A stretch of DNA of 64,000 bases from Malacoraja senta (Eukaryota), in contig CM075978.1 in assembly GCA_038087875.1 (NCBI GenBank), forward strand, positions 173,476,001-173,540,000. The letters are read 5' to 3'. A program made the translations under genes and the position numbers. Shown piece after piece: positions 633-62,841 of this stretch (positions are counted from its first letter, which is position 1; each line of letters starts with the position of its first letter). Under the pieces are notes generated by a model, which saw only the letters and a list, made by a program, of their open reading frames with translations, had not been told where the DNA came from and did no database searches.

Positions 633-1267
633 AGAAACATCACCTATCTACATTCTCCAGAATTGCTGCCTGACCCGCTGAGTTACTCCAGCATTGTTTG
701 TATATCGTTCGTATAAACCAGCATCTGCAGATTTTTTTAATGACATCAAACATGCTTATTGCACTGTTTCATCAATGCACTAAAACCCCTGACATATAAA
801 CAGAGACATGCAGGAAAACTCAAGCAAGGCAGCATCTGTGGAATGGGAATGAGAGGCAACGTTTCAGGTCGACAACATTTCATTAGTAGTATATTAAATG
901 TTAATGTGAGAAAACTCTGTTTTTCCTCTCTCCAAGGCCGCTGCTCGACCGGCTGGCTATTTCAAACGTTCCCTTTGATTTCAGAATTACAGTAGTCACA
1001 GTGTTTTCCAATTTAATTTCAGCACTGTCTTTTTCCTCTCTCTCCTGCTTTCAGAGAACGTGGAAAAATACAGCACAAGAACAGCCCACAATTTCTGTGT
1101 CTAACATGATGCCATTAAACTAATCTCCTCTGATGGCACATGATCCATATCCCTCCATTTCCTACATATCCATCTATCTAAAAGCCTCAAGTGCCATCAT
1201 CGTATCTGCCTCCACCACCACCAATTCATTTATCTCATTTAATTTAATTTAATTTATTCCAATTATG

Positions 1268-1368
1268 TGTTTTTTTTGTTTTGTCGTGATTCTATGCATT
1301 GTAAGGTGTCCTTGGGTTTTAGAAAGGCGCCAGTAAATAAAATGATTATTATTATTATTATTATTATT
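1268..1368 (+). mobile_element. L2-type LINE/SINE 3' tail with (ATT)n
   Basis: tgtaaggtgtccttggg...gaaaggcgcc...aataaaatg(att)n matches the L2-type tail also ending the SINE at 41725-41785. Confidence 0.65.
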
Positions 1369-1770
1369 GTGTTTGACCCTCGTTCAAAGAGGTCAGCTGC
1401 GATCAACAACCCTTCACCGCCCTCACCCCACCACTTCCATTTGCACCATTCCATCTCTCCAGGCCTCCATCCCATCAGACATTTCCTGTGCCCCTCTCTG
1501 CAACTTCAAACATATTTGCCAACTTGCCCTGTTGAAAGTTCTGGAACACCAACTCACTGGTCACTGACCTACCATTCAGGGAGACTTGTCTTCCACCACC
1601 CCCTGCCTTCCTTCACCAAGCCAATGTGGGATGCCATTATCCAACTCGCCTTGGATCCCATGTGCCTACCACGCGGGGCATGGTCAAATGCCTTACTAAA
1701 GTCTACCTTACCTTCAACAATCCTCCCAGTAACCATATCGTATGTGAGAACTGCAAGAGGCACCCATATG

Positions 1771-1925
1771 TAGAAACAAGGAACTGCAGATGCTGGTTTA
1801 CCAAGGACACAAAATACTGGAGTAACTCAGCAGGTTAGGGAGTATATCTGGAGAGCATTAGTCGGTAATGTTTCGGGTCAAGACCCTTCTCCAGATGGAA
1901 GACTCCAGCATTTTGAGTTTGTCCT
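1771..1925 (-). mobile_element. Penelope-derived mini-element
   Basis: aaggaactgcagatgctgg...ggagtaactcagc...gtttcgggtcaagacccttc module, repeated throughout the window. Confidence 0.65.
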
Positions 1926-2747
1926 CCGAAGCATCAACAAACCTCCCATCTCCAGTACCCCCAACTCAAGAGGTTTAGCTACAAGTACAGGTTTGAAGTT
2001 TCCAAGGTTTCCATAGGAGTCCGTCTCCCACTGACTGGTTAATCACACGGTACTATTAACTATCACAATCTATTTAAATCTGCCATTGAGGCTACCGTGT
2101 TAGAGTTCCTACAGGAAAACATACCAAATTGAGCAATTTACAGCTTAACACACACTCCACTTACAAGTCATTTTTCGGAATGAAGGCAGCAGGGTTTCCC
2201 GTTCCTTTCCCAAGGATTCCAAGTGGGTTCAAACAGAATAGTGGATGCCTCTGTCAGTACACCAGCAGCACCATTAATAGCTTATGCTGCTCACTGCGGC
2301 CATTTTGCAGTGAAGTTAGTTTCTCCTATAAATACACCGGTGGAAGGCATGCCAATGAGTCATCTGGAACCTTGTCTACTGAACTTCAAACAACAACTTT
2401 TATCAAACATACACCATGTTCCTGCTAGTTAGTCCAGCGTGTATCCACAGTAGAGCCCAACAATGCACGATGTGACCACACCAATCCTGCAGCCTGGAGC
2501 TGTCACATGAAAGATACCATCTCAGACAGCCTATCAACATAAGAGCTTGCATTTATATTGCTCATTTATCACATGCCTCAACCATTGCCCAGTACTCTGC
2601 ATACAATGAGTCACTTGAACACTGTTTAGATATGTCACTGGGCTATCGTGGACACAGCCAGGGATGCATACAGTTGCCCGCTGTTGGCTGCAGTGAGGGG
2701 TAGGAAACCACTCGAGGAATCCTTGCAGCAACATTTCACAAAGATTG

Positions 2748-2970
2748 TAGACACAAGGAACTGCAGATGCCGGTTTATAAAAAAAGACAAAGTGCAGGAG
2801 TAACACAGCGAGTCAGGCAGCATCTCTGGAGTTCACGGATGGGTGACATTTCAGGATGAGACCCTTTGTCAGTCTTAAGAAGGGTCCCGAGCCAAAACGT
2901 TGCCTATCCATGTTCTCCACAGATTGGAGCCAAGACCCACCAAGTTACTCCAGCACTTTGTGCCTTTTTC
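2748..2970. mobile_element. Penelope-derived mini-element with inverted halves
   Basis: The same module followed by its partial reverse complement (fold-back). Confidence 0.7.
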
Positions 2971-3047
2971 TACTGTAACATTGGCTGGTTATGATTTGTC
3001 AACAAAGATTGCAGATGACAGACTTGGTTCCTGAATGTCAGGAAGAT

Positions 3048-3323
3048 AGGGGTGGCACAGTAGCGCAGCGGTAGAGTTGCTGCCTCACAGGGCCAGCGAC
3101 CTGGGTTCCATCCTGGCTACGGATACGTCTGTGTGGTCTGCTTGTTCTCCCTGTAACCATGTGGGTTTCCTCTGGGTGCTCTGGTTTCCTCCCACATCGC
3201 AAGGTATGTAGAGTGTGGATGAGAAAGTGAGATAACATAGAACTAGTGTGAACGGGTGGTCGATGGTTGGCGTGGACTCGGTGGCCTGAGGACCTGTTTC
3301 CATGCTTTATCTTTCAACCAATC
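3048..3323 (+). mobile_element. tRNA-derived V-SINE (HE1-like)
   Basis: tRNA-like head ggcacagtagcgcagcggtagag with B-box-like gggttccatcc, central tgggtttcctctgggtgctctggtttcctcccaca V-domain, and CR1/HER1-like tail. Confidence 0.85.
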
Positions 3324-4053
3324 CCTTCTACCAATTACTTCATGTCCTAGTATTTAGCCTGACAAGGGAAACAGGTCTTTCCTGTTGAACCTATGCAAAA
3401 CTCCCAATTTGCAAGTAAATATCGCTCGACACAGTGAAACAGCAGTCTGCACTAGAGGGCATACCTTCACACTAAAAACAGGGAAAACGCCCTTCACTAT
3501 AATTCACACAATTTCAAGGGGTTTTAAGTGGGAAAAAGAGTACTTTTTCATTGTTAAAAAAGTACACCTGTATTCTAATCTCTCAGAACACAACACTGTC
3601 AAAAAGAAAAAAAATGTCGCGGGTGGGGGGGGGCAGAAAACACTTCATACTTACAAGTGCCATTGAGGATCACTTTGTACAACATTACAAATCAAACCAA
3701 TGTTTTGATGCTGCTTGGAATCATTAAATGAAGGAACTCCGTCTGACATAACACCCCCTCCTTGATGACACACAAACACTTTAAGTATATGCTTCACAGA
3801 AAAAAAACAACGTGGAAATGAGTGAAGGCTGGGAGAACCATCAAAACCAACATGAAGAACCAGCTTGGACGATTTTATTTGCATTATGTTATATAAAATA
3901 AACACCTCAGAAAGACATGGGATCCGGTATGAATGAGTCACTGAGAGAACTTAGAGAGCTTGGTTCACCACAAAGAAGCCCTTTCACTCGCTCAGAGCCA
4001 GGCAGGCCATCTGTACCAAAACATGCAGGGTGTAGCAAGCCAGCCCTGCTCCT

Positions 4054-4165
4054 CTTGACGGCACCAACTCCACACTACAACCTCATGCCCATCAGTACTT
4101 GCCCATTTACTTGACGGCACCAACTCCACACTACAACCTCATGCCCATCAGTACTTGCCCATTTA
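4054..4165. repeat. Perfect 56-bp tandem duplication
   Basis: cttgacggcaccaactcc...cttgcccattta occurs twice head-to-tail (4054-4109, 4110-4165). Confidence 0.95.
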
Positions 4166-4235
4166 CTTTTCCCAAGTAATATCGGTCTTTGTAAACCGCC
4201 ATCTGCAGTCAAGAGTCAGGAGTGTTTTATTGTCA

Positions 4236-4420
4236 GGTACACAAAAATGCTGGAGAAACTCAGCGGGTGCAGCAGCATCTATGGAGCGAAGGAAATAGGT
4301 AACGTTTCGGGCCGAAACCCTTCTTCAGACGCTGCTTTAGATGCTGCTGCACCTGCTGAGTTTCTCCAGCATTTTTGTGTACCTTCGATTTTCCAGCATC
4401 TGCAGTTCCTTCTTTAACAC
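4236..4420. mobile_element. Young Penelope-derived mini-element with 15-bp TSD and hammerhead core
   Basis: agtgttttattgtca at 4221-4235 and 4421-4435; internal inverted repeat; CTGAAGA-A-GGGTTTCGGCCC-GAAACGTT on the minus strand (4301-4328). Confidence 0.85.
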
Positions 4421-19228: not shown

Positions 19229-20446
19229 TCTATTATAATATAAAACTCTGATCTTGGATGTTTACTTGTGGGGATGTTTGCTTGCTTGAACTTTTTCTTT
19301 GATTCAGATGTTTTCACATCTCCTCGAAAACCCGACGCGGTAACAGCGAAATTTTTACCTATTCCGGTAGAGATTTATCTCATGATCTCAAAATTCCCAC
19401 CTGAAATTGGATTAATTATTTCCAGAGTTTTTTTACTAAAATTGTTCACCAATCTGACATCTTTTTGAAATCTAACGTGCTGAGGCGAGCTAGGATGACG
19501 TCACAATGCCTTTGCTCCTCGCGGCAAGCTGCGCAGAATTTTCAACGCGCAGGGGGCACTGTGTCCCACGAGGTCCAGTTACGTGTTCCAGCCGCACTCC
19601 ACCCCCCAGGGCTCTGGATTGAAGCCGTTGAACACGTGATCAAGTCGTGCTGCGCACTCCGCTGGGCTCCTTCCAGTTCTACAACATGGTCGTTATTGCA
19701 GCACTGGGGGGGAGAGGAGAGGGGTGAGGAGGAGAGGGGGTGGGAGGGAGAAGGGGGAGAGGAGAGGGGGGGAGAGGAGGGAGGGGAGGGAGAGGGGGGG
19801 GGAGAGGAGAGAGGGGGGGGAGAGAGGAGAGGGGAGAGAGGGGGGAGGAGAGGGACCTCCTCCTCCCTCCCTCCCTCTCTGCCCCCCCTCCCTCTCTGCC
19901 CCCCCCTCCCTCTCTGCCCCCCCCTCTCTCTGCCCCCCCCTCCCTCTCTGCCCCCCCTCCCTCTCTGCCCCCCCCTCCCCCCCTCCCTCTCTGCCTCCCC
20001 CCCTCCCTCTCTGCCCCCCCCTCCCTCTCGCCCCCCCTCCCTCTCGCCCCCTCCCTCTCGCCCCCCCTCCCTCTCGTCATCCCTCTCTCTGCCCCCCTCC
20101 CTCTCTAGGGAGTGGTGAATATTCGGACCTATGGGTGAGTGGTGGAGTATTGCGTTCGGGAACCAGCCCTGTGATGCTGCGCCCCCCCCCATCCCTCAAT
20201 CTCCACCCCCTCCCTATGTACCCCCCTCCCCCTCCCACCCCCCCTCTCTAGCTGCGCCTGCACAGTTGGGGGTTATGTGCGAATGGCTAGGGCGGGGGAT
20301 GGGGTAAAAGGAGCGAATGAATAATATTAAAGTGTGTGTGAGCGCACGTGCGTGCATGTGTGACGCCAAAGGCCGCCCCCTCCCCCCCCCCCCCCCCGCA
20401 ACCGCACATTGAGGGGACGGGACCCAACGGTTCCCCCCTGGTCTAG
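19229..20446 (+). mobile_element. Non-autonomous Helitron
   Basis: Starts TCTATTATAATATAAAACTCTG after host A. Ends with hairpin GGGACCCAACGGTTCCC (20419-20435) then GGTCTAG before host T. No TSD. Confidence 0.88.
19705..20105. repeat. Polypurine tract followed by polypyrimidine tract (low complexity) inside the Helitron
   Basis: G/A-rich run to about 19855, then an imperfect ccccccctccctctctg-type array. Confidence 0.9.
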
Positions 20447-27961: not shown

Positions 27962-29466
27962 AGACTTTAGGGATACAGCGCAAAACAGGCCATTCAGCCC
28001 ACTAAGTCCACACCGACCAGCGTTCCTTCGCTCGTGTGTCAGACGATGTAGCTCACTGTTGGCTTCTATCGTCGTCCAACATGTTGACGGAATTGTCGCC
28101 CAACGCGTCACAGAGTGCATTGCGTCCTCGCTTCCAGGGATCGTCACAAAGAGGCTTCTGTCATGTCACCGACCAACAATCACCCCATACACTAGCACTA
28201 TGCTACACACTAGGGTCAATTTACAATTTATACCAAAGCTAATTAACCTACAAACCTGTACATCTTTGGAATGTGGAAACCAGAGCATCCGGTGATCACC
28301 CACGTTGTCACAAGGAGACTGAGAACAAGCTCCATATAGTAGCAATGTTACAAAATTTTGAGATTTTAAAAATAAAGTCTGCAATTTATATCATCAGATA
28401 AAGCACAAAAAGAAATTTAATTTGACACTTAATTCACTTTCATATCTTCAGTATTAAAAAAGTTATGGCCATTATCATACTCAGAAATTAGCATCTAGTT
28501 CCCTATTGCTTTTCCATTGACTTAACACAAAAGCTGTGATCGAGGACAGTTAAAAGCCCATAACTTTCTTAAAAATTATGATAACTGAAATAATTTTTCA
28601 GTTATTATAGATTGAAGCATTCTGAAACAAATATGAAACAATCTTACTTCGAAGACATGAAAGTAAAGCATATAATTAGTTAGTTACCTAATTGTAGCTA
28701 ATTACAAAATTCAATTACTAGACTAAACATCTATCAATTTCTTAAGAATAGATTAACATTTTTAAATAGCCTGTGTCCAAATAACATTCACACAATAATT
28801 CACAATATAACATAATTTTTAAATCTAATTTTCATGAATTTACAGGCCAAATGGAAGGAATTGAATGTTTAATACCTGTAAATTAATGGGGATTTAAATC
28901 ATCTTGTGAGTGAGGATTTCTGGAACGCGATCTTTTGGAACTTTCATTTGTGATGAATTTAACCCCGTATTGGCATGAAAAATACTGCCGTTAATTCGGG
29001 GAATAAAATCACCGTGTCGCATGAAAAAATGTGAATTAAAGGCTTCTTAAGAAGCACTTTTATACATTTAAAGAAACCACTTTCGTTTACCTGTCCCGTG
29101 TGCGAAATCCGTCCCCGTTATCGGCGTTGACGCTTCAGGAGCTGCTTTTAAAATTACTCTAGCGCTGACATTGACGATTTAATAAAAATAAAAAATTCAC
29201 AAAACGCCACTAGGAACGATTTGCCAGCCAAGGCGTGTACTCCAACAAAATATTAAACAGGACAAGGGAGGAGAAACCCCCGTTTTAACCCCGCCCCCCC
29301 TTAAAGGCGCCAAAATCGCGCACACGGCCAGTGGCAGAATTACAGCGCGACTGAAGGTAAGTTTTGTAACACACCTACATATAGAAAGCATCCATAGTGT
29401 CAGGATTGAACCTGGATCTCTGGTGCTGTGAGGCAGCAACTCTACTGCTATGCCACTGTGCTGCCC
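27962..29466 (-). mobile_element. V-SINE interrupted by two insertions
   Basis: SINE tail and body at 27962-28339 and head at 29385-29466, split by inserts at 28022-28166 and 28340-29377. Confidence 0.8.
28340..29377 (-). mobile_element. Non-autonomous DNA transposon, hATw-like, copy 1 (1038 bp)
   Basis: Termini TAGCAATGTTACAAAA / TTTTGTAACACACCTA; TSD CATATAG at 28333-28339 and 29378-29384; reverse-complement homolog of 51293-52330. Confidence 0.88.
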
Positions 29467-38662: not shown

Positions 38663-41444
38663 AATACCCTCAAAAGATATTTCAAGGCATTTTCTTACCG
38701 ACCTCAATGTAAGTGGACTTCCAGTGAAACCAGCTGCTTCAAAGTGCATTTGTGCTGACAGGCACATGTTCAAATGTTGAAGAATTTCTCAGATGGCTCA
38801 AACTTCGACCCCCTGTCCCAACCCATGTTTGTGCCACGGCCACAGAGCAAAAGTCAACAGCACAATGACAAGTCATTACTCCTGAAATAACACTCAAATG
38901 TAAGGCGATGACCATTCCAATGGATTGTTTTTTGTACCAACAGCTTGCTTGCTTCAGCCCCAATGTTCAGACCTTCCCTCACTTTGCATCAAATCATCCC
39001 CAAACCCTGTAGTCCCAAACATGGGCAGCTCACTCACTCGTTGCTTCCTCCTGCGACCTAACCCCAAACCTGGAGCTAATGCCCATTATCCGGTCTCGCT
39101 CTTTCCTACCCTTTCTTCCCTGCTCTTTCAATAGACAATAGATAATAGACAATAGGTGCAGGAGTAGGCCACTCGGACCTTCGAGCCAGCACCGCCATAC
39201 AATGTGATCATGACTGATCATCACCAATCAGTGCCCCTTTCCTTCCTTCTCCCCATATCCCCTGACTCCGCTATCTTTAAGAGCCCTATCTTGCTCTCTC
39301 TTGAAAGTATCCAGAGAACCGGCCTCCAACACCCTCTGAGGCAGAGAATTTCACAGACTCACAACTGTGTTTCTGCAGCCCGTCACTTAGAATCATGCTG
39401 ACACAGGCTCTTCAGCCTTTCAATATCTGTGCTATCTCTTTGGAATGGCCACATGGCAAACCCACTCACCACATCCTCATCCCCAATGCAATCCCCTCTC
39501 TGCTACGATTTATTGCATGAAAATTATGACTAAATGTCCATTAATCCCTTTTTCAAGCAGCAAATACCAGATCAAAACATGCCACTTAAAACAACTGATT
39601 CTTGTGGTGACACAAAAAACTGCAGATGCTGGAATCCTGAGCCAAAACACAAAGTGCTGGAGAAACTCAGCCAGTTAAGCAGCATATGTGGAGGACCAAC
39701 AAAGTTTCAGATCGTCTGAAGATGGGGCCCAACTCAAAATGTCATCTATTCCCTCCACAGATGCTGACTGAGCCGCTGAGTTCCTCCAGCACGCGATTCT
39801 TTTGACATTTAAACTGTTTCAGTTATCAGCCCAACGAGAGAAACTATTTATTTTTACCTGATCTATCATAGTTATCGAGCTAGGGAGCGTGAGAAAAGCC
39901 TTTCAGCCCAACTTGTCCACGCCAACCAAGTTGACATTCTGGGCAGGTCCTATTTGCTTGCGTTTGACCCAACCTTTCCTATCCATTATCACCCCAAATG
40001 TGTTTTGAATGTCATAATTGTATCCACTTCTATAGCTTTCTTTGGCAACTCATTCCAGATTATAACTACCATCCAAGTGACAATGATGCCCCTGAGGTCC
40101 ATTCTAAATCTCTCCCTTCTCACCATAAGCCTGCACTCTCTAGTCTTAGAATCCTCTACTCTAATGTAATATGATCTCACCCCACCAACAACCTTAATTG
40201 GAATTAAGTGCTGGTGTTGTTAAGGATTCCCTTCCCAGCCTTCAGTCACCCTTTTCTCACCATTGACACCGTGATATTTTTCTAACTGAGCATTGGACCT
40301 TGCAGCACACAGCAACAAAGCACTGGCAGCTCTGAAGAAATCACAAGCCAAGCAGAGGGGGAATAAAGTAGTTGTGCAGCATGGGATCAGGCCCTTCCAC
40401 CCACTTGATGCAGGCCGACCAAGTTGGCATCCTGGGCGAGTTCTATTTGCCTGCATTTCGCCCAGAGCCCTCTCAACCCTTCGGTCCATATATCTGTACA
40501 TGTAGATTACACCACAGAGCTTGCATTCTCCCAATACCATGAACCAAATGGCACTCCCTACATATCCATGCATCTGTCTAAAAGCCTCCTAAATCCCACT
40601 GTCGTTTCTGCCTCCACCACCACCCGACATGGCATTTCAGGTACCCACCACCCTTGCACTCTGGCCACTGGCACTGTACCTACCTGCTTCAAGCATGCGG
40701 TGGTCCAACCAATCCTGAAAAAAACTAACCTTGACCCCACCTGGCCAAGCAACTACAGACCCGTTTCTAAACTGCCTTTCCTCTCAAAAGCCCTTGAAAA
40801 GGTAATTTTAAGTCAACTTATACCTTACCTTCACCAAAACACTATCTTGGAAACTTTCCAATCAGGCTTCAGGGCTCACCATAGCACAGTGTGCCTTGTT
40901 GAAGGTACACAATGACCTACTGCTCACCGTTGACTCCGGCAACTGTGCAATTCTGCTCCTTCTTGACCTCAGCGCAGCATTTGATACTGTCGACCACACC
41001 ATCCTAATTGACCGTCTCCGGTATGGGGTTGGTATTGATAGCACTGCCCTGAGCTGGTTCATCTCCTACCTCAAAGGTAGGAGTTTCTCGACTAACATAG
41101 GCAACTCTTTCTCCTCCCCAGCTAATCTCTGCTGTGGGGTTCAACAAGGTTCCATCTTTGGCCCCATTCTCTTCTCCCTGTATATGCTCCCCTTAGGCCA
41201 AGTCATTGAAAGGCACGGCATTTCCTTCCATTGCTACGCAGACGATACACAACTCTATCTCCCCCTGAAGCCCAAAAACCACTCAAATCTGCTTAACCTT
41301 ACCCACTGCCTCGAGGATATAAAGTGTTGGATGGCCCAGAACTTCCTCCAACTAAACGAGAATAAGTCTGAGGTCATCCTTCTCGGCACCTCGGACTCAA
41401 TCAAAATGATAGCAGGCAGCCTTGGAAGCCTTACCCCACTACTT

Positions 41445-51045: not shown

Positions 51046-51292
51046 TATAACCATAATAGTGCGCAGTCGAGGTCGATAGAGCAACCAAGGACACAGTCCA
51101 TTGACATTCACAGTCATTGACGTTAGTGTTGTGCAGTGTTCAAGACCCTGATGGTTACTGGGAAGAAGCTGGTCTTGAACCTGCAGGTCATGGTTTTCAG
51201 GCTCAATAGACAATAGGTGCAGGAGTAGGCCATTCACCCATTCGAGCCAGCACCGCCATTCACTGTGATCATGGCTGATCATCCACAATCAG

Positions 51293-52330
51293 TAGGTATG
51301 TTACAATACTTGCCTTCAGTCGCGCTGTAATTCTGTCACTGGCCGTGTGCGCGATTTTGGCGCCTTTAAGGGGGGGGCGGGGTTAAAACGCGGTTTCTCC
51401 TACCTTGTCCTGAATTATATTTTGTTGGAGTACAAGCGTTTGCGGAAGAATCGTTCCGAGGGGCGTTTTGAGTATTTTGTTTTAAAAATCTCCCGACAAG
51501 TTCCGCGATGGAATCATTTAAAAATCATCTTCTGAACCCGTCAACGTCAACAACGGGGACGGATTTCACACACGGGAAAGGTAAACGAAAGTGCTTTATT
51601 TTTATGTATAAACGTTCTCCTTAAGAGGCCTTTAATTCACATTTTTACATGCGACACGGTGATTTTTTCCCCCGAACTAACGGCAATAATTTTCATGCCA
51701 ATACAGGGTTAAATTCACCGCAAATGAACGTTCCAAATGATCGCGTTCCAGAAATCCCCATTCGCAAGATGATATAAATTCCCATTAATTTACAGGTATT
51801 AAACATTCAAATTCTTCCATTTGGCCTGTAAATCCATGACAATGAGATAAAAAAATTGTGTTATATTGTGAATTCTTGTGTGAATGTTATTTGGATACAG
51901 GCTATTTAAAAATGTTAATCTATTCTTAAGAAATTGATAGATGTTTAGATCTAGTAATTGAATTTTGTAATTAGCTACAATTAGGTAACTAACTAATTAT
52001 ATGCTTTAATTTCATGTCATCTAAGTAAGATTGTTTCATATTTGTTTCAGAATGCTTCAATCTATAATAACTGAAAATTTATTTCAGTTCTCTTAATTTT
52101 TAAGAAAGTTATGGGCTTTTGACTGTCCTCGATCACAGCTTTTGTGTTAAGTCAATGGAAAAGTAATAGGGAACAAGATGCTAATTTCCGAGTATGAAAA
52201 TGGCCATAACTTTTTTAATACTGAAGATATGAAAGTGAATTAGGTGTCAAATTAAACTTCTTTTTATGCTTTATCTGATGGGATAAATTAGACTTGATTT
52301 TTTAAATCTCAAAATTTTGTAACATTGCTA
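51293..52330 (+). mobile_element. Non-autonomous DNA transposon, hATw-like, copy 2 (1038 bp)
   Basis: Termini TAGGTATGTTACAATA / TTTTGTAACATTGCTA; TSD CAATCAG at 51286-51292 and 52331-52337; splits a CR1 tail. Confidence 0.9.
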
Positions 52331-55249
52331 CAATCAGTACCCCGTTCCTGCCTTCTCCCCATATCCCTTGATTCTGCTATCTTTAAGAGCTCTATCTAAC
52401 TCTCTCTGGAAAGCATCCAGAGAATTGGCCTTCACTGCCATCTGAGGCTCCTATACCTTCTCCCAATAGTAGCAGCAAGATGAGAGCATAGCCAGGTTGG
52501 TGTGGGTCTCTGACGATACTGGCTGCCTTACTGAGGTAGGGGCACCTGTAGATCCCTTCGATGGTGGGGATGTCAGTACCAGTGAAGGATGGGACAGTGT
52601 CCATCACTCACTGCAATCTTCTTTGTTCCTGTGTGTTCGAGTTCACAAACCAGGCCAGTCAGTAAGGTGTGGAGGGATATGGGCCCGATGCAGGCAAGTG
52701 AGACTAGCTTGGTTAAGCAACTTGGTCGGCATGGACACGTAGGACCGAAGGGCCTGTTTCCACCCTCTATACCCAAGAAATACCTCTCTGGGTAAAGACG
52801 TTTCCATTTCAGTCCTAAATTATAGACCCCTCGCTTTGAAACTGTGACGCCCCATTTCACATTCCTTACCCATGTCAATCCTTGTAAGAATTTTGAACGG
52901 CGATTCATCGCCTCGCTCTGGATTATATATCGAAAACTTTACTAATTCCCATCCTACCAACAGCTAGAGAGCAACAATCCACCTCATTGGAGAACCTCAG
53001 ACTATATATGATAGTAATTCACGTAATTTCCTTTATCATGTATCTGTACACTGTGGATGCCTCGATTGTACTCATGTCTTTCCACTGACTGGTTAGCACG
53101 CAACAAAAGCTTTTCACTGTACCTCGGTACACGTGACAATAAATTAAACTCAAACACGTTTTTCTAAACCAAGGTAATGCAAGTGGAATTTGTAAATCTG
53201 CTGGGGGTTGGGGTTAGAGGCAGGAGGTTGTCAATTCATCTCTAAACAAGGACCACTCTCAAAGTATGAAAGTCTACACCTTGTGAGATCACACCGCAAG
53301 AATGCTCGCCAGCCACTGCAAACCACAACAGCATTCCACAACATCGAAATCAAATCCTGCCCTGGGGAACTCAAAGTTCAGAAACCTTTACGATCAATAT
53401 TACTCCAATATATTTGTCCCACATTAATACTTAAAAAGCCTGATAGTTCAGAAGATTAAAAACCTTAGCAAACAACAATAACAACAACAGATTCCTAACC
53501 TCACACAAAGTGAGAAAGGTCTGAGATTTTTGATTTTAGGAATTGTAAAGTAGGCAATTTGAAATCCTAGAATGTAGGAACAAGGAACTGCTGATGCTGG
53601 TTTAATTTGAAATCCTATTTTGTTTACAGATCGATAAGCAAAGCTGAGAGATGCAGCACTTCATCATTCAATGTAAACAGTCATTTGATTAATGCCAAAA
53701 ATAAACTTTAACCACATTTTGTCATTTTTCCTACCCCAGTAAAAGCAAGAATTATGTGGTTATGGAAAGGCAGAATCTTTTCCTTCTCCGATGCATCAGG
53801 AAGCAACAGGCAAGGCCAACGCACACATATATTCATTCAATTACCACCACCCCTCGGGTTCTGGTAATGAATGACGTCTCCTAAACAAACAGCCTTGGCA
53901 CAACGTTTTATTCTGGGGACTATTGCACGTCAAGTCTTGAGCTTTCCCCACACCTGTTGCCACCACACAGGCAGGAACGGCACAGACCAGGGACAGTTGG
54001 TGCACTGTGACCAGACATAAGGCAGCCAGGCCGTGGGCAGTCCAGCACTGTGGCCCTGGAGTTACTGCCACTCTCCCAGCCCCCCATTGCACCCGAGTCA
54101 ACCCACCCCGGACACCACCACCACCCCCACCAGTGAAAGGACAGCTCACCTCAAAATCCACCCCCGTCCCATCAATAACATTGCACACTCAGCGCACCCC
54201 CTCCCTGCATCCGTCTCCCCGCTCCCTCAGACCCAGGGTACGCACTCCCTGCTCGCACACAGCCCCTGCCCCAATGTTACACACTCCCCACAGCCCCTGA
54301 CCCAGAGTAAAAACTTATCACCGCCTGCTGCGCTCCTCCTCCCTCCCCGCCCCCCACAGCCTCAGACCTGTGGTAGAAACACCGTGCCCCACCCCCACGG
54401 GTACATACTCCTCTCTCCCCCACAGCCCTTGATCCGAGGTACACATTCAACTCCTACTCCAAAGCCAGGCAAGCAATCACCCACCATCTCCCATACTGAA
54501 CACAAGCACACTCCCATCCCCACTCTCATAGAAAATAGGTGTAGGCCCGGGCACACACATCGTCCTTTCTCGCCCAGACCCAAGAACCTGCACCCCCCCC
54601 TCCCAGCCCCACGCAACCATCTCTCTCTGGTAATCCGCATCTGTCTTTCCCCCTCCCCCCCCCCCCCCCGATACAATACCAGACATTCCCTCCGTTATCC
54701 AGTCTGGGTTACACATACACACCCCGGCCCACTCTCAGTGGTCTGTACATCCCCAAACCCAGGTATCCACAAGCACCCACCTATCTCCCCGGTCTGGGGT
54801 ACTACTGAACCACACACTCCCCAAGCAATCGCAGACATGGCCCCCGTGTTTGATCTGGGATACACACCTCGCCCATTCTCACACATCAGCACCCCTCTCA
54901 CCCTCCTCCCCCCCCCCCCAGTACTGACCCTCTCTCCTCTCCAACACCCCCCCCCCACTCTACAATCCCAAGCATCGGCCCTCTCCACAATACACTGACA
55001 TCAGCAGCCTCTCTCTCCTCAATACTCCCCCACCACACAATCCCAGGCATCGCCCCCCTTCTCCCGCTCCGCTCTCAGAAACTCACACTTACTCTCCCCC
55101 CCCCCCCCCAAATCAAGGTAGGTGGGTAGGCGCCCCCCCCCCTTCAGACAGACCCGCGGGTTCGGAATGCACGCACAACCCCCTCGTACCCCACCCTAAG
55201 AGGCTCGTACACCTCCTAGACCTGAAATACACGCACCCCCCCCCCGGGA

Positions 55250-56140
55250 ACTCCCCACCCATCCAACCCCAGTCACCCGGCCTCCCCGAGCGCCGCCATC
55301 CCACTCCCCTCCTCAGTCACCCGCGCCCCCCTCTCCCCCGGGCCAGACAACAGCCGCTCCTCCGCGCCCCTCACTCCCCGACCCGGGCCCCTCACTCACT
55401 CCCCCCCCTCCTCACTGCACCCGGCACTGGGCCCAGTCACCACTCCCTGCCCCCCGACCCTCACCCCCGGGGCCACCACCTCACCCCCGAGGCCCCCACG
55501 CCCCCACCACCCCCGGCCCTACCTGTGTGCGGTGCGGCGGCGGCTGCGGCGGCGACCCAGGGCCGAGCTCCGCTGCTGACGGATCGAGACGGCTCCGGGG
55601 GGTGGGAGTGGGGGGGAAGGCGCCGCTCGCTCCCGCTCCGTGTCGCGCGCCTGTCCCCAGCGCGCGTGCCCGCCTGCCACCGCCGGGAGCGCGCCCTCAA
55701 CCGGTCGCCCACCCTCCCGACCCCAAACTAGTGATGGGGGGGGATGTTCAGCCTCACCCAGTGCCAAAGAACTGGGTTCTCAGTCAAATATGCCACAGGT
55801 TTATAACCTCCATTGATTTTTAAAATGTAATTATATTGGTGTGAATGTAGTCGGTTCGCAAAACCGGAATAACGGCCGAACCCAAGGCCCATGTAAGCGG
55901 TTGCAACCCTTTAGCAACCCATCCACATGGACTCGTCCTAACCGGATGTGACGTATAGTAACGCTGGCCAGTTTTTAAATGAATATGTTTTAAACGGGGA
56001 GGTCCTGCTTTTCGATTTTAATTCCTGTTTCCCATCGCTTTCAATATAAAGTTTAGAACGTTAATTTAACATCTGAATGAGTAGTTTGGTTTCCCGGGCC
56101 CCTTGTGCGGTGCGGTGCATTATGGGCGTTGTAGTTCTAT
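55250..56140 (-). promoter_or_regulatory. CpG island and housekeeping-type promoter of an unidentified minus-strand gene
   Basis: Dense CpG at about 55270-55720; ETS-CRE-like CCGGATGTGACGTA at 55942-55955; ZNF143/THAP11-type motif ACTACAACGCCCATAATGCA on the minus strand at about 56116-56135; C-rich plus-strand skew at 54000-55520. Confidence 0.75.
55523..55690 (-). other. Probable non-coding first exon (TSS approximate)
   Basis: GC-rich GCCGCCGCAGCCGCCGCC 5'-UTR-like sequence ending in donor CAG|GTAGGG at 55523/55522, followed by a G-rich intron start; no credible ATG frame. Confidence 0.65.
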
Positions 56141-58900: not shown

Positions 58901-59881
58901 GAATCTTGATTCCCCTACCCTGAGAAAAAGACTGTACATTCACCCTATCAATACCCCTCGTTGATCACCTCCCAGCATCCTACACTCCAGGCAATAATGT
59001 CCTAGCCTGCTCCACCTCACCCTATAGATCCAGCCCCCGAGTCCTGGCATTCTCGTAAATCTCCTCTGCACCCTTCCCAGCTTAATGGCATATTTCCATG
59101 CAAGGGTGACTAAAACTAAACACAATACTCCAAATGCAGCCTCACCAACATCTTGTACAACTGTAACATAATGTCCCAACTTCTGTATCCAATTAAAAAA
59201 GACACAAAGTGCTGGAGTAACTCAGCATAGGTGACGTATTGCTATGGATAGGTGACGTTTCTCCAGAAGGAAGAAGGGTGAAGCCACCTGGTTCACTGAT
59301 GCCACAGAAGGCTATGAAGGCCAAGTCAATGGATATTGTTAAGGCAGAGATTGACAGAATCTTGATTAATAAAGGTCTAACGCCTTCAACGCCTTCAACA
59401 TCACGGATCGCAATATCAGGACAAAACAAAAGGTATGTCGTTTATTTAACATATTATCTTGCTTTTTAGTGTGGCTTCATTTTAATCTTATGATGCAAAA
59501 AATGTTATTTAGGTCCCCATACGAATCGGCCGTGTCTTGCCTGCTGATAGGGGCTTAAAATTTATGGCAACGGCAACATTCCAATCGATCACATTCCAGA
59601 AACATCCACTCTCAAGATAATGAAATTCATTATTTTTTGCACAATCATGTCATAAGAACATCTAAATCATCTATTTTTTGAGTTATTGTCTATCCATGAT
59701 CAATATTTTCATACTAAATATCCACAGTACAGTTTTAGTCAGATGTATTGTGCAAAAAAATTATGATTTTGATTATCTTGAGAGTGGATGTTTCTGGATT
59801 AATTTATGGGAATTAAATATTAAATTCCTTCCATTTGGCATATAAATTCATGACAAAGTGAGATTTATAAATCATGTTATA

Positions 59882-60635
59882 ATGGCTTCAAGTTGGGAAA
59901 AGGGGAAGTACAACTTGATCTAGAGGTCCTTTTTCATCAGTCTATGAAAGTAAGCATGCAGGTACAGCAGGCAGTGAAGAAAGCGAATGGCATGTTGGCC
60001 TTTAAAACAAGAGGAATCGAATATAGGAGCAAAGAGGTCCTTCTGCAGTTGTACAGAGCCCTAGTGAGACCACATCTGGAGTATTGTGAGCAGTTTTGGT
60101 CCCCTAATTTGAGGAAGGACATTCTTGCTATTGAGGGAGTGCAGCGTAGGTTTACAAGGTTAATTCCCGGGATGGCGGGACTGTCATATGCTGAGAGAAT
60201 GGAGCAGCTGGGCTTGTACACTCTGGAGTTTAGAAGGATGAGAGGGCATCTCATTGAAACATATAAGATTGTTAAGGGTTTGGACACGCTAGAGGCAGGA
60301 AACATGTTCCCGATGTTGGGGGAGTCCAGAACCAGCAGCCACAGTTTAAGAATAAGGAGTAAGCCATTTAGAACGGAGACGAGGAAACACTTTTTCTCAC
60401 AGAGAGTGGTGAGTCTGTGGAATTCTCTGCATCAGAGGGCGGTGGAGGCAGGTTCTCTGAATGCTTTCAAGAGAGAGCTAGATAGGGCTCTTAAAAATAG
60501 CAGAGTCAGGAGATATGGGGAGAAGGCAGGAACGGGGTACTGATTGGGGATGATCAGCCATGATCACATTGAATGGCGGTGCTGGCTCAAAGGGCCGAAT
60601 GGCCTACTCCTGCACCTATTGTCTATTGTCTATTG
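59882..60635 (+). mobile_element. CR1 (HER1-like) LINE 3' fragment nested in the DNA transposon
   Basis: ORF 59893-60543 LYRALVRPHLEYC...FFSQRVVSLWNSL; (ctattgt)n tail. Confidence 0.95.
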
Positions 60636-60909
60636 TGAATTCTTGTGTGAATGGGATCAGTTTGTTATTTTATTTGGATAGGCTATTTAAAAATGTTAGC
60701 CTTTTCTTAAGAAATGGATAGATGTTTAGATCTAGTAATTAAATTTAGATTAATTTAATTGATTAGATGAATTGATTTGATGAAACTGATGAATATGAAT
60801 TTTTTGTTGGTTATTTACTATTTGTTATAGCGTTTAACTTCATAATTTCTAAGTTTTTTCCTAAAACTGCAAATAACAACTTGTTTTTTTTTCTTTACAT
60901 TTTAAACAG

Positions 60910-61247
60910 ATGTCTCCGAAAAAGAAATGCAAAATTGTCAATCCAAATGCCCAGCAAAAGAGACTGATTTAGACAGCATTCGCAGAAATTATCCGAATTT
61001 GACTCCAAATGTGATGATCTATAGGACATTCTTAATGGAAAAGTAGGGCAGAAAGGCATGTCATGCGTGGTTTGAAGAGCAAAAACTTGTAGTTTACAAT
61101 GCCAAAATTGAAAAGTTGAGGAAAAACAAGGTGTACAGAGTTGCTTATTGGTTACAATCTGAGGAGTATGATGATGCTACTGATTATGATATGCCAATGT
61201 ACCAGCTAGCAGCTGATCTTCTCCATAAAGACTTGGTCTTTTGCTAG
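60910..61247 (+). pseudogene. Decayed terminal coding exon of the transposon, with a putative Spindlin/Tudor-like domain
   Basis: Acceptor ttttaaacag| at 60909. The open frame 61047-61247 reads GRKACHAWFEEQKLVVYNAKIEKLRKNKVYRVAYWLQSEEYDDATDYDMPMYQLAADLLHKDLVFC*; the upstream part has stops and a frameshift. Confidence 0.55.
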
Positions 61248-62219
61248 AAATTGTAATTTCTTTACCTGTTTGTTACAGACATACAGCATATAATACAATA
61301 ATATTAAAGTTCTGATCTTCAGAATATCACATTTTTGAATTTTCATGGCAGTCTGGGTGTTTATGACTATTTCCGTCACAACGGTCAATTTTGTAATTAG
61401 CTTCAATTAGGAAACTAACTAATTATACGCTTTAATTTCAGGTCATCCAAGTAAGATATTTCATATTTGTTTCAGAATGCTTCAATCTATAATAACTGAA
61501 ATTTTCATTCAGTTCTCTTAATTTTTGCCCTCGATTAAAGCTTTTGTGTTAAGTCAATGGAAAAGCAATAGGGAACAAGATGCTAATTTCCAAGTATGAA
61601 AATGACCATAACCTTTTTAATACTGAAGATAAGAAAGTGAATTAGGTATCAAATTGAAGTTCTTTTTTATGCTTTATCTGATGGGATAAATACAGGCTTA
61701 ATTTTTTTAATCTCTAAATTTTGTGACATTCCTACTTGATGGGCCGAATGGCCTAATTTTGCTCCTATATAAACTTAAATGAAGGAGCGGGAATCGACAC
61801 AGTCTGCCTTAGCTGTGGATTTGGCCAAATAAAGTTTAAAAACTTTGTGGAGGGCAGGGCGATGATCAACTAACTGTGCCCAGGGCCACGGCTCCCTCTC
61901 ACTCTAGGCCAACATTGCCATCTGCTGGGGCTGGCTGCCATTTCAGGCCAAGAGAGGCAGAGTCTGAAGAAGGCTCCCGTCCCGAAACATCACCTATCCA
62001 TGTTCTTCAGGGAAGCTGCCAGACCCGCTGAGTTACTCCAGCTTTTTGTGTCTTTCTCCAAATCATACCATTGCCGAGTACAATCACACCACACACAAGT
62101 ACAACAGGTAGTGCAAAGAGAAACATACAGAGTGCAGAATATAGTGTTACAGCATTATAGTCACAGTTACAGACTTGGAGGTCGTGGTTTTCAGACTCCT
62201 GTCATATCTTCCCGATGTT

Positions 62220-62510: not shown

Positions 62511-62573
62511 CAGGACAACACGATCCGGGCCCCGTGGCAACAGAGCGATGTATAGGGAAGGGGGGAACAAGCT

Positions 62574-62758
62574 GGGAATGGGGAATGTGCAGGGAATGGG
62601 AATGTGCAGGGAGTGGGAATGTGCAGGGAATGGGAATGTGCAGGGAAAGGGAATGTGCAGGGAGTGGGAATGTGCAGGGAGTGGGAATGTGCAGGGAGTG
62701 GGAATGTGCAGGGAATGGGAATGTGCAGGGAGTGGGAATGTGCAAGGAACGGGGAATT
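62574..62758. repeat. 17-bp G-rich minisatellite (gggaatgtgcaggga[a/g]t), about 10 copies
   Basis: Directly visible tandem array. Confidence 0.95.
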
Positions 62759-62841
62759 GCATACAACAGTGTAGCACAGAGACAGGCCCTTTGGCCCACA
62801 ATGTCTGTGCCGAACATGATGCCAAGACCAACTCATCTACC

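What the first reader, a model, noticed from the sequence alone, without database searches (positions are those of the whole stretch)
60910..61247. DNA transposon copy retains a decayed exon encoding a Spindlin/Tudor-like domain
Seen: only copy 3 of the TAG...CTA family has an extra internal block, with a strong splice acceptor and a 66-codon open frame (GRKACHAWFEEQKLVVYNAKIEK...VYRVAYW...YQLAADLLHKDLVFC*). The ORF track does not list it. Established: Spin/Ssty Tudor-like repeats follow G-x-R/K-x-x-H-x-W, an aromatic strand and Y-x-V/I-x-Y, and Spindlin reads methylated histones. Inference: this is the last exon of the autonomous partner's transposase or cargo gene, so the family may carry a chromatin-reader module that could guide insertion or counter silencing.
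Basis: partly seen in the sequence, partly recalled or inferred. Interest (0 to 1): 0.8.

Follow-up and report, generated by a model that had tools for sequence, protein, structure and literature searches.

The report
Dead transposon copy keeps Tudor tail
The 66-codon frame is the tail end of a transposase gene left in a broken, internally deleted transposon copy; intact copies elsewhere in this genome show a hAT-like cut-and-paste enzyme ending in a Spindlin-like Tudor barrel that may read chromatin marks.

Summary
The open frame is real (61047-61244, stop 61245-61247). It is not a spliced last exon. Intact 4.27-kb copies elsewhere in the genome (e.g. L035) carry one intronless 978-codon ORF, and the window frame is its last 66 codons.

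The "splice acceptor" at 60909 sits directly before that ORF's start codon (ATG 60910). A 2.6-kb internal deletion (junction 60954/60957) joins codon 15 to codon about 881. Other copies and contigs of public runs share this junction. The window copy is also truncated on the left, split by a LINE fragment, and hit by two small deletions and a stop.

The C-terminal domain folds confidently (pLDDT 92) into a Tudor-like barrel. Spindlins are its nearest structures, though scores are weak. Its aromatic residues are conserved in 71 animal homologs. The core most resembles the hAT transposase Hermes (Z 18.2), with D429, D506, CxxH and E784. Target duplications are 7 bp, not 8.

Pfam matches neither the protein nor ten homologs scanned; sources that name homologs mostly call them uncharacterized. 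Autonomous copies look very young (99.8% identical). Histone reading and guided insertion remain inference. Two other first-reader notes flagged this family elsewhere in this genome.

The parts
59377..59881 (+). Left-arm remnant of copy 3 (non-coding 5' region of the element). About 235 bp, including the left TIR, is missing upstream.
   Evidence: 94% identical over 506 bp to L033 7170-7674. Other copies (L033, L013, L031) stay homologous to each other further upstream, but the window does not.
59882..60635 (+). 3' fragment of a LINE nested inside copy 3. It has a reverse-transcriptase-tail ORF at 59893-60543 and a (CTATTGT)n-like tail.
   Evidence: Element homology stops at 59881-59884 and resumes at about 60631. 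The same LINE tail recurs at 39130-39366 and 51204-51294.
60636..60909 (+).
   Evidence: Aligns to element positions 607-825 of L035, directly upstream of the ORF start. A similar T-rich tract ending in AG precedes the ATG in L035 (TAG there, CAG in the window).
60910..60954 (+). First 15 codons of the transposase ORF (ATG...CAG; MSPKKKCKIVNPNAQ).
   Evidence: Frame 1 translation compared with the start of the 978-aa ORF of L035; DNA alignment.
60955..60956 (+). Internal-deletion junction (filler CA). It removes about 2595 bp, roughly codons 16-880.
   Evidence: Window 60882-60954 matches element positions 796-870, and 60957-61735 matches 3466-4273. L033, L034, L002, L003, L013, L015, L023 and L027 share the junction. 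The joint L035 3548->6144 with 'CA' between appears in contigs of runs X3 and X4, and 3547->6144 with 'ACA' in X2.
60957..61046 (+). Damaged codons about 881-912 (linker and capping helices before the barrel). Damage: a 4-bp deletion after AATTTG, CAG>TAG, and a 2-bp deletion in GTA--GGGC.
   Evidence: Alignment of the window with L035 6130-6455 and with L033; translations.
61047..61247 (+). The 66-codon open frame plus its stop codon: the last 66 codons of the transposase, which form the Spindlin-like Tudor barrel.
   Evidence: Translation. Differs at 6 of 66 residues (91% identical) from L035 residues 913-978, by comparing the two peptides. Fold model pLDDT 92. Spindlin matches.
61248..61734 (+). 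3' untranslated region and right terminal inverted repeat (ends ...TTTTGTGACATTCCTA).
   Evidence: Aligns to the element's 3' end in L031, L032, L033, L035 and copies 1 and 2.
61735..61741 (+). The 7 bases (CTTGATG) flanking the right end, where the target-site duplication would lie. The left partner is missing because the left end is missing.
   Evidence: The 7-bp duplication rule comes from 11 independent insertions.
51293..52330 (+). Copy 2: a 1-kb non-coding derivative lacking element positions 676-3901. Flanked by the 7-bp duplication CAATCAG (51286-51292 and 52331-52337).
28340..29377 (-). Copy 1: the same 1-kb derivative in reverse orientation, flanked by CTATATG.

Best explanation
Window 59377-61734 is a dead copy of a non-autonomous, internally deleted derivative of an abundant TIR ('cut-and-paste') DNA transposon.

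Anatomy of the family (shown):
- Autonomous copies are about 4.27 kb, end in TAGGTATGTTACAAAA...CTA, and make 7-bp target duplications.
- They encode one intronless 978-aa protein. It has an N-terminal region with a coiled coil, a Hermes/hAT-like RNase-H-fold DDE core with a long helical insertion domain, and a single C-terminal Tudor-like barrel closest to Spindlin repeats.
- Candidate catalytic residues are D429 and D506, followed by C531-x-x-H534, and E784.

How the window copy arose (shown):
- A 2.6-kb deletion removed codons 16-880.
- That placed the start-codon region (ATG 60910, preceded by a pyrimidine-rich tract and CAG) 47 bp upstream of the coding sequence for the protein's tail.
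- The 66-codon open frame is simply the last 66 codons, the barrel itself.
- This copy cannot make protein or move. The ATG is out of frame with the tail, there are two further small deletions and a stop, a LINE fragment is nested in it, and the left end is gone.

Mechanism (inferred, not shown): in intact elements the transposase excises and reinserts the element by the hAT-type DDE mechanism. The C-terminal barrel probably binds a methylated, basic histone tail through its conserved aromatic cluster, tethering the transposase to a particular chromatin state. This would be analogous to chromodomain-bearing retrotransposon integrases.
For: Anatomy of the window copy:
- Mapping of the window onto full-length elements.
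- The same junction occurs in other genomic copies and in contigs of three public runs.

Intact ORFs and youth:
- 12 places have a 978-codon open frame, and others range from 963 to 1029.
- L035 and L036 elements are 99.77% identical, with homology ending exactly at the termini.
- At least 19 places are 100% identical over 145 bp of 3' UTR.

Copy numbers (candidates of the first look): 2031 for the tail peptide, 163 for a core piece, 4669 for the 1-kb derivative.

Target duplication: a 7-bp direct repeat flanks 11 independent insertions; three carry one mismatch and two further cases were unclear.

Core:
- Model pLDDT 90 with beta-beta-beta-alpha-beta-alpha-beta topology.
- Foldseek ranks Hermes first at E 1.7e-6. 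VIA gives Hermes Z 18.2 over 357 residues, against about 10 for the next hits.
- D429, D506 and E784 are 90% or more conserved; C531 and H534 are invariant. Each sits on the expected secondary-structure element.

Tail:
- Model pLDDT 92.
- Spindlins fill the top of Foldseek PDB and take the top 13 Swiss-Prot places.
- VIA gives RDM15 Tudor and Spindlin-4 Z 7.2 each.
- The family profile finds Spindlin-4, -3 and -1 as the best PDB sequences, E 0.008-0.05.
- Single members hit Pfam Tudor families.
- W920, Y929, Y942, Y946, W947 and F/Y959 are aromatic in at least 66 of 71 homologs; D969 is invariant and D958 is D in 64 of 71.
- The barrel is net acidic, mean charge -3.5.
Against: - All Spindlin and Tudor matches are weak: Foldseek E 0.01-0.2, VIA Z 7.2 (inside the range the tool calls common), HMMER per-domain E about 0.9. 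Pfam Spin-Ssty does not match.
- Small SH3-like barrels also bind DNA or proteins. TraI, TnsB, CarD and UvrD Tudor domains appear in the same list.
- No histone-binding, expression or insertion-site evidence was obtained. The runs laid were probably DNA.
- hAT membership is incomplete: 7-bp rather than 8-bp duplications, and no Pfam hAT or BED match.
- Catalytic residues come from conservation and a predicted model, not from a residue-level superposition.
Confidence: 0.8

Rival explanations
1. The C-terminal barrel is not a histone reader. It would be a DNA-binding or multimerisation SH3-like domain, like the C-terminal domain of retroviral integrases or the barrels of TnsB and Mu-type transposases, helping to hold transposon ends or target DNA.
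For: - The VIA list mixes Tudor readers with DNA or protein-binding barrels at similar Z: TraI 6.7, CarD 5.4, TnsB 5.1, UvrD Tudor 5.1.
- All Spindlin scores are modest.
- A catalytic RNase-H core followed by a small C-terminal barrel is also the retroviral integrase layout (established knowledge).
Against: - The barrel is net acidic, mean -3.5, and its second half is -7.8. That is unfavourable for DNA binding.
- The conserved residues are aromatic (W920, Y929, Y946, W947, F/Y959) plus acidic ones. In the HMMER alignment three of them align with aromatic residues of Spindlin-4, which from memory are cage positions of Spindlin1 repeat 1.
- Spin/Ssty proteins outrank every other family in three separate libraries.
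Confidence: 0.25
2. The frame is a last exon, of a host gene or a cargo gene captured by the transposon, and is spliced at 60909.
For: - A pyrimidine tract plus CAG precedes 60910.
- A comparable T-rich tract plus AG precedes the ATG in full-length copies, so a 5'-UTR intron ending there cannot be excluded.
Against: - In full-length copies the tail is in one continuous 978-codon frame with the DDE core.
- The domain sits at the C-terminus of the same protein in homologs from several animal phyla.
- The window's proximity of 60910 to the tail comes from a deletion junction shared with other copies.
- The reading frame from 60910 hits a stop after 20 codons.
Confidence: 0.03
3. Deletion derivatives that keep the tail are retained because they express a stand-alone Tudor mini-protein that modulates transposition, like truncated repressor forms of other transposases.
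For: - Derivatives keeping the tail far outnumber full-length copies: 2031 against 163 candidates.
- At least two different deletion junctions both keep it.
- Rare variants in the 66 codons of 20 distinct copies were 20 synonymous, 11 non-synonymous and 0 stops, against 19% synonymous expected.
Against: - The sample was picked by protein similarity, which enriches for synonymous changes, so the count is biased.
- In the window copy the ATG is out of frame with the tail, and in L033 the ATG is destroyed.
- Retention can equally reflect cis-acting sequences in the 3' 750 bp, or chance.
- No RNA evidence exists.
Confidence: 0.05

Closest known systems
hAT superfamily transposases (Hermes as the solved example)
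   Same: - RNase-H-fold DDE core with a large all-helical insertion domain between strand 5 and the catalytic E.
- A CxxH motif after strand 5.
- TIR element with TAG... termini, a single transposase ORF, and abundant internally deleted and MITE-like derivatives.
- Hermes is by far the best structural match (Z 18.2 over 357 residues; Foldseek E 1.7e-6).
   Different: - 7-bp instead of 8-bp target duplications.
- No Pfam match to hAT dimerisation, BED or any other family.
- About 11% sequence identity to Hermes.
- Carries a C-terminal Tudor-like barrel and an N-terminal coiled coil that Hermes lacks.
- Fungal 'hAT7' lineages with 7-bp duplications are described (PMC12730594). Kinship to them was not tested.
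Spin/Ssty family (Spindlin-1 to -4, Ssty): Tudor-like histone methyl-mark readers
   Same: - The same small barrel. Spin/Ssty proteins are the best matches in PDB sequences, PDB structures and Swiss-Prot models.
- Shared motif G-R-x-I-x-H-x-W ... aromatic-x-G ... Y-x-V/I-x-Y, with aromatic residues at aligned positions.
   Different: - One barrel rather than three tandem repeats, capped by two N-terminal helices.
- Fused to a transposase.
- About 15-18% identity, and Pfam Spin-Ssty does not reach any threshold.
- Ligand unknown.
Chromodomain-bearing integrases of chromoviruses (Ty3/gypsy) and other tethered integrases
   Same: By analogy only (established knowledge): an RNase-H-fold recombinase carrying a C-terminal 'royal family' methyl-lysine reader fold that can direct integration to a chromatin state.
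   Different: Those are retrotransposon integrases with a chromodomain. This is a cut-and-paste DDE transposase with a Tudor-like barrel. No targeting data exist here.
Dada and Kyakuja DNA transposons (the other groups reported with 6-7 bp duplications)
   Same: A target duplication of 7 bp, and a DDE core with a C/DxxH motif of the hAT/P/MuDR/Kolobok type (PMC3706591, PMC12730594).
   Different: - Dada has no TIRs, has introns and zinc fingers, and inserts only into small RNA genes (PMC3706591). The present family has TIRs, no introns, and varied insertion sites.
- Kyakuja has CA..TG ends without TIRs (PMC12730594), and no Pfam KDZ match was found here.

Membership tests
hAT superfamily | DDE catalytic core of RNase-H fold, interrupted by a large all-alpha insertion domain | tested here: met
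   - The model (pLDDT 90) shows three strands, a helix, a strand, a helix and a strand, then about 250 helical residues before the helix carrying E784.
- Hermes is the top hit by Foldseek (E 1.7e-6) and by VIA (Z 18.2).
hAT superfamily | C/DxxH motif shortly after the second catalytic D | tested here: met
   C531 and H534 are invariant in 87 homologs (A3 positions C182 and H185) and lie just after strand 5.
hAT superfamily | 8-bp target-site duplication | tested here: not met
   A 7-bp direct repeat flanks 11 independent insertions, three of them with one mismatch. The eighth base disagrees in 4 of the 11. hAT lineages with 5, 6 and 7 bp are reported (PMC12730594).
hAT superfamily | Sequence match to hAT family models (C-terminal dimerisation domain, BED finger) | tested here: not met
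   Pfam finds no family for the 978-aa protein even at E up to 10, and none for ten divergent homologs. The structural alignment does run to Hermes residue 609.
hAT superfamily | Short TIRs with a YARNG-type terminal motif | tested here: inconclusive
   The termini are TAGGT... on the left and TAGCA... on the right (reverse complement). Y-A-R is met but the fifth base is not G.
Spin/Ssty (Spindlin) family | Tudor-like five-strand barrel closest to Spindlin repeats | tested here: met
   - Model pLDDT 92.
- Spindlins dominate Foldseek PDB: 24 of the top 25, E 0.02-0.09, TM by query about 0.5.
- Spin/Ssty proteins take the top 13 places in Swiss-Prot models.
- VIA gives Spindlin-4 Z 7.2.
- All scores are modest.
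Spin/Ssty (Spindlin) family | Significant sequence match to the Pfam Spin-Ssty model | tested here: not met
   No Spin-Ssty hit for the window peptide or for any of 71 homologous tails. Only weak hits to other Tudor models appeared: BAHCC1-like in 7 of 71, PTM/DIR17 in 5 of 71. The family profile against PDB sequences gave Spindlin-4 at E 0.008.
Spin/Ssty (Spindlin) family | Three tandem Tudor-like repeats | tested here: not met
   There is a single barrel at residues about 909-978. The rest of the protein is coiled coil and transposase core.
Spin/Ssty (Spindlin) family | Aromatic cage that binds methyl-lysine or methyl-arginine | tested here: inconclusive
   - W920, Y929, Y946, W947 and F/Y959 are conserved in at least 66 of 71 homologs.
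- W920, Y929 and Y946 align with aromatic residues of Spindlin-4 repeat 1.
- Model coordinates could not be inspected, and binding was not tested.
Non-autonomous (internally deleted) derivative of a TIR transposon | Shares terminal and subterminal sequence with an autonomous element but lacks most of the coding region, and the same deletion junction recurs in other copies | tested here: met
   The junction is shared with 8 fetched loci and with contigs of runs X2, X3 and X4.
Dada superfamily | No TIRs, intron-containing gene, CCCC and CCHC zinc fingers, insertion only into small RNA genes | tested here: not met
   This family has TIRs, an intronless ORF and varied flanks. Dada features are taken from PMC3706591.

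The most novel reading that the evidence does not exclude
This would be a widespread animal lineage of hAT-like cut-and-paste transposases with a built-in Spindlin-type reader of methylated histone tails, which steers integration to a chromatin state. It would be still active, or active very recently, in this vertebrate genome. It may also share ancestry with the host Spin/Ssty reader family, in one direction or the other.
Probability: 0.3. Interest if true: 0.8.

Novelty: new variant of a known kind. Interest (0 to 1): 0.55.

Why it matters
The window feature itself is an ordinary dead transposon relic. It does lead to a large transposase family that is essentially unannotated:
- The family profile finds 2779 protein clusters at E up to 0.001.
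- Homologs occur in fish, Hydra, molluscs, echinoderms, a priapulid and a sponge.
- Pfam matches neither the protein nor the ten homologs scanned, and nearly all homologs that carry a name are called uncharacterized or hypothetical.

The family joins a hAT-like DDE core to a Spindlin-like Tudor barrel. Reader domains that direct integration are known for retrotransposon integrases. I found no description of one on a cut-and-paste transposase in the searchable literature.

If the barrel reads a histone mark, the family offers a natural model for chromatin-guided DNA transposition. With near-identical intact copies in a vertebrate, it could also be a candidate for a new transposon tool. It further bears on where the Spin/Ssty reader fold came from.

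Tried and rejected
- **Pfam.** Nothing useful for the 66-aa peptide, the ORF pieces or the whole 978-aa protein. Ten divergent homologs also gave nothing, apart from a chimeric piggyBac piece in one.
- **Core profile against PDB sequences.** No hit.
- **ESM Atlas.** Only unnamed clusters.
- **Cluster look-up.** No names.
- **Dada superfamily.** Rejected after reading PMC3706591.
- **Kyakuja/KDZ and P element.** Considered because of the 7-bp duplications. There is no Pfam KDZ or THAP/P match. The P element scores far below Hermes: Z 9.0 against 18.2.
- **An 8-bp duplication with the element starting at AG.** Rejected, because the eighth base differs in 4 of 11 insertions.
- **RNA evidence.** No listed run is on record as RNA, and the four laid runs behave like DNA contigs. 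Neither expression nor a 5'-UTR intron could be tested.
- **Selection test on the 66 codons.** Rare variants were 20 synonymous, 11 non-synonymous and 0 stops. I set this aside because the loci were chosen by protein similarity.
- **Literature.** Searches for a Tudor- or Spindlin-bearing transposase found nothing relevant.
- **Complex prediction.** Not run: no histone reference is offered, and no binding claim rests on it.

Full report
**1. The observation**

The window holds three copies of one TIR family. Two are 1-kb non-coding copies, at 51293-52330 and at 28340-29377 on the reverse strand. The third ends at 61734.

Only the third has an extra internal block, and it contains a stop-free 66-codon frame at 61047-61244 with the stop at 61245-61247. 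The ORF lister shows only the portion after its first start codon (61116..61247).

The frame is far from a chance ORF. A six-frame search of the window's own 1.94-Gb genome gave 2031 candidate places. All 150 that were scored were 92-100% identical to the peptide.

**2. What the block is**

Some copies elsewhere had much longer open frames (378 and 400 codons). Following those led to full-length elements of about 4.27 kb, for example L035 2679-6950. These carry one uninterrupted ORF of 978 codons (L035 3504..6440).

Twelve places in the genome have a 978-codon open frame over this gene, and several more range from 963 to 1029. Two full-length elements are 99.77% identical, with homology stopping exactly at the termini. 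At least 19 places are 100% identical over 145 bp of 3' UTR. The autonomous element is therefore very young.

Mapping the window onto a full-length element gives this layout:

| Window coordinates | Element part |
|---|---|
| 60636-60909 | 5' UTR |
| 60910-60954 | first 15 codons (window MSPKKKCKIVNPNAQ; L035 MSPKKKCKIVNPKAQ) |
| 60955-60956 | CA junction |
| 60957-61734 | the element's last ~800 bp, starting at about codon 881 |

The 'strong splice acceptor' at 60909 is thus the pyrimidine-rich stretch and AG directly before the transposase's start codon. It lies near the tail only because 2595 bp (codons 16-880) were deleted.

The deletion is not private to this locus. Eight of the loci I fetched have the same junction. 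Contigs of three public runs show the joint L035 3548->6144 with the same CA filler, or ACA in one run.

A second, commoner class of derivatives has a different junction near window position 61017 and also keeps the tail. The 1-kb copies 1 and 2 lack element positions 676-3901, and so the whole ORF.

The window copy has further damage:
- Between 60957 and 61046 it has a 4-bp deletion, a CAG>TAG change and a 2-bp deletion.
- A LINE 3' fragment is nested at 59882-60635.
- Its left arm (59377-59881, 94% identical to L033) breaks off about 235 bp short of the left terminus.

It can neither encode protein nor transpose.

**3. Termini and target duplication**

Ends read TAGGTATGTTACAAAA... on the left and ...TTTTGTAACATTGCTA on the right. 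Eleven independent insertions are flanked by a 7-bp direct repeat, three of them with one mismatch. They are copies 1 and 2, L031, L035, L036, L040, L042, L047, L048, L054 and the L041 group. Two further cases, L039 and L037, were unclear. An eighth base agrees in only 7 of the 11, so the duplication is 7 bp.

**4. The protein**

Pfam finds nothing in the 978-aa protein. A search of 5.8 billion proteins found 121 relatives. They come from teleosts (Scleropages, Misgurnus, Oryzias), Hydra, molluscs, echinoderms, a priapulid, a brachiopod, an annelid and a sponge. Nearly all that carry a name are 'uncharacterized' or 'hypothetical', and nearly all have no Pfam domain on record. A profile of the core finds 2779 clusters at E up to 0.001 among 1.84 billion representatives.

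*Core (residues 350-835).*
- AlphaFold with 87 homologs gives pLDDT 90. The topology is three strands, a helix, a strand, a helix and a strand, followed by about 250 helical residues.
- Foldseek ranks the hAT transposase Hermes first (E 1.7e-6 to 3.5e-5), then the P element (5e-4), ISCth4 and Transib.
- The independent aligner gives Hermes Z 18.2 over 357 residues. Integrase cores follow at about 10 and the P element at 9.0.
- D429 lies on strand 1, D506 just after strand 4, C531-x-x-H534 after strand 5, and E784 on a helix. C531 and H534 are invariant and the three acidic residues are 90% or more conserved.
- This is the DDE plus CxxH signature of the hAT/P/MULE/Kolobok group. The residue assignment is inferred from conservation and predicted topology.

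*Tail (residues 882-978).*
- The domain sits at the very C-terminus in 70+ homologs.
- AlphaFold with 71 homologs gives pLDDT 92: two short helices capping a five-strand barrel with one helix.
- Foldseek against the PDB lists Spindlin-1, -2B and -4 in 24 of the top 25 places (E 0.02-0.09, TM by query about 0.5, rmsd 2.2-3.9). SMN Tudor, Agenet, chromo-barrel, PWWP and Sm folds follow.
- Against Swiss-Prot models the top 13 are all Spin/Ssty proteins, aligned to their second repeat.
- The independent aligner gives RDM15 Tudor and Spindlin-4 Z 7.2 each, and BAHCC1 Tudor 6.4. DNA or protein-binding barrels such as TraI, CarD and TnsB score 5-6.7. The tool warns that Z below 8 is common.
- By sequence, the family profile picks Spindlin-4, -3 and -1 as the best PDB chains (E 0.008-0.05), in register with repeat 1.
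- Single members touch Pfam Tudor models, but never Spin-Ssty.
- W920, Y929, Y942, Y946, W947 and F/Y959 are aromatic in at least 66 of 71 homologs. D969 is invariant and D958 is D in 64 of 71.
- The barrel is net acidic, mean charge -3.5, with its second half at -7.8.
- The window peptide keeps all these residues.

**5. Mechanism**

*Shown:* the element's anatomy, the deletion origin of the window arrangement, the hAT-like fold of the core, and the Tudor-like fold of the tail.

*Inferred:* cut-and-paste transposition by a hAT-type DDE mechanism, and binding of a methylated basic histone tail by the barrel, which would tether the transposase to a chromatin state.

The chief rival is that the barrel is a DNA-binding or assembly domain like an integrase C-terminal domain. 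The acidic surface and the aromatic conservation argue against this, but do not exclude it.

A stand-alone Tudor mini-protein made from derivative copies is unlikely. The one count that hinted at constraint (20 synonymous, 11 non-synonymous) came from loci picked by protein similarity. An unbiased resample was not possible.

**6. Comparison with known families**

The core works like a hAT transposase and is structurally closest to one. Two membership features were tested and not met: the 8-bp duplication and any match to hAT sequence models. I therefore describe it as hAT-like, not as a confirmed hAT member. Fungal hAT lineages with 7-bp duplications have been named hAT7 (PMC12730594), and kinship to them is untested.

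Dada has 6-7 bp duplications but differs in every other respect (PMC3706591). Kyakuja has 7-bp duplications but CA..TG ends without TIRs.

The tail resembles a Spindlin repeat but is a single barrel and fails the Pfam model. Full-text searches for a Spindlin- or Tudor-bearing transposase found nothing relevant. Absence from that library is not proof that it is undescribed, and Repbase and Dfam could not be consulted.

**7. Verdict**

The fold call and the guess of a hAT core hold. The exon and splice reading does not.

The window feature is a dead relic of ordinary kind. The family behind it is an unannotated, apparently recently active hAT-like transposon with a probable chromatin-reader tail, which is moderately interesting. 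Two other first-reader notes in this genome (s1-210357 and s1-193206) flagged the same fusion on other DNA. They are unchecked notes and add no independent evidence.

Noticed in passing
L041, L043-L046, L049-L053, L055-L066 (other places of the same genome): 22 of the 30 best 1-kb derivative copies share the same flanks (ATTGGCCTCTAG | element | CCTCTAGTGTGTA). Whole 4-kb loci on different contigs are 97-99% identical. That insertion therefore sits inside a larger repeat unit that was itself amplified, which inflates copy counts of the 1-kb form.
   Followed up: partly
window 60880-60909; L035 3474-3503: A T-rich tract ending in AG directly precedes the transposase start codon in both the window copy (CAG) and full-length copies (TAG). 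It could be the acceptor of a 5'-UTR intron. No RNA data were available to test this.
   Followed up: partly
L035 2679-6951, laid with runs X1-X4: Contigs from runs labelled as several different coded organisms (A to G) hold parts of the element. Three hold the same internal-deletion junction as the window, so the family and its derivatives seem shared among related species or samples.
   Followed up: partly
window 59893-60543: A 216-aa open frame encodes the C-terminal part of a LINE reverse transcriptase, nested in transposon copy 3. The same LINE tail recurs at 39130-39366, 51204-51294 and 52331-52448.
   Followed up: no
window 62547-62801: A tandem array of a 17-bp unit (GGGAATGTGCAGGGAGT-like), about 15 copies (family D2).
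   Followed up: no
window 19706-20117: A long purine-rich (G/A) low-complexity tract with overlapping short-period repeats (families D1 and D7).
   Followed up: no
window 54001-56000: A G+C-rich block (0.63 against about 0.44 around it) with a strong negative GC skew of -0.41. Possibly a CpG island or a C-rich repeat.
   Followed up: no
L002-L030 (tail-bearing derivative copies): About three quarters of the best tail-bearing copies (22 of 29) use a second deletion junction near window position 61017, not the window's junction. At least two independent deletion derivatives that keep the Tudor-coding 3' 750 bp have therefore been amplified.
   Followed up: partly
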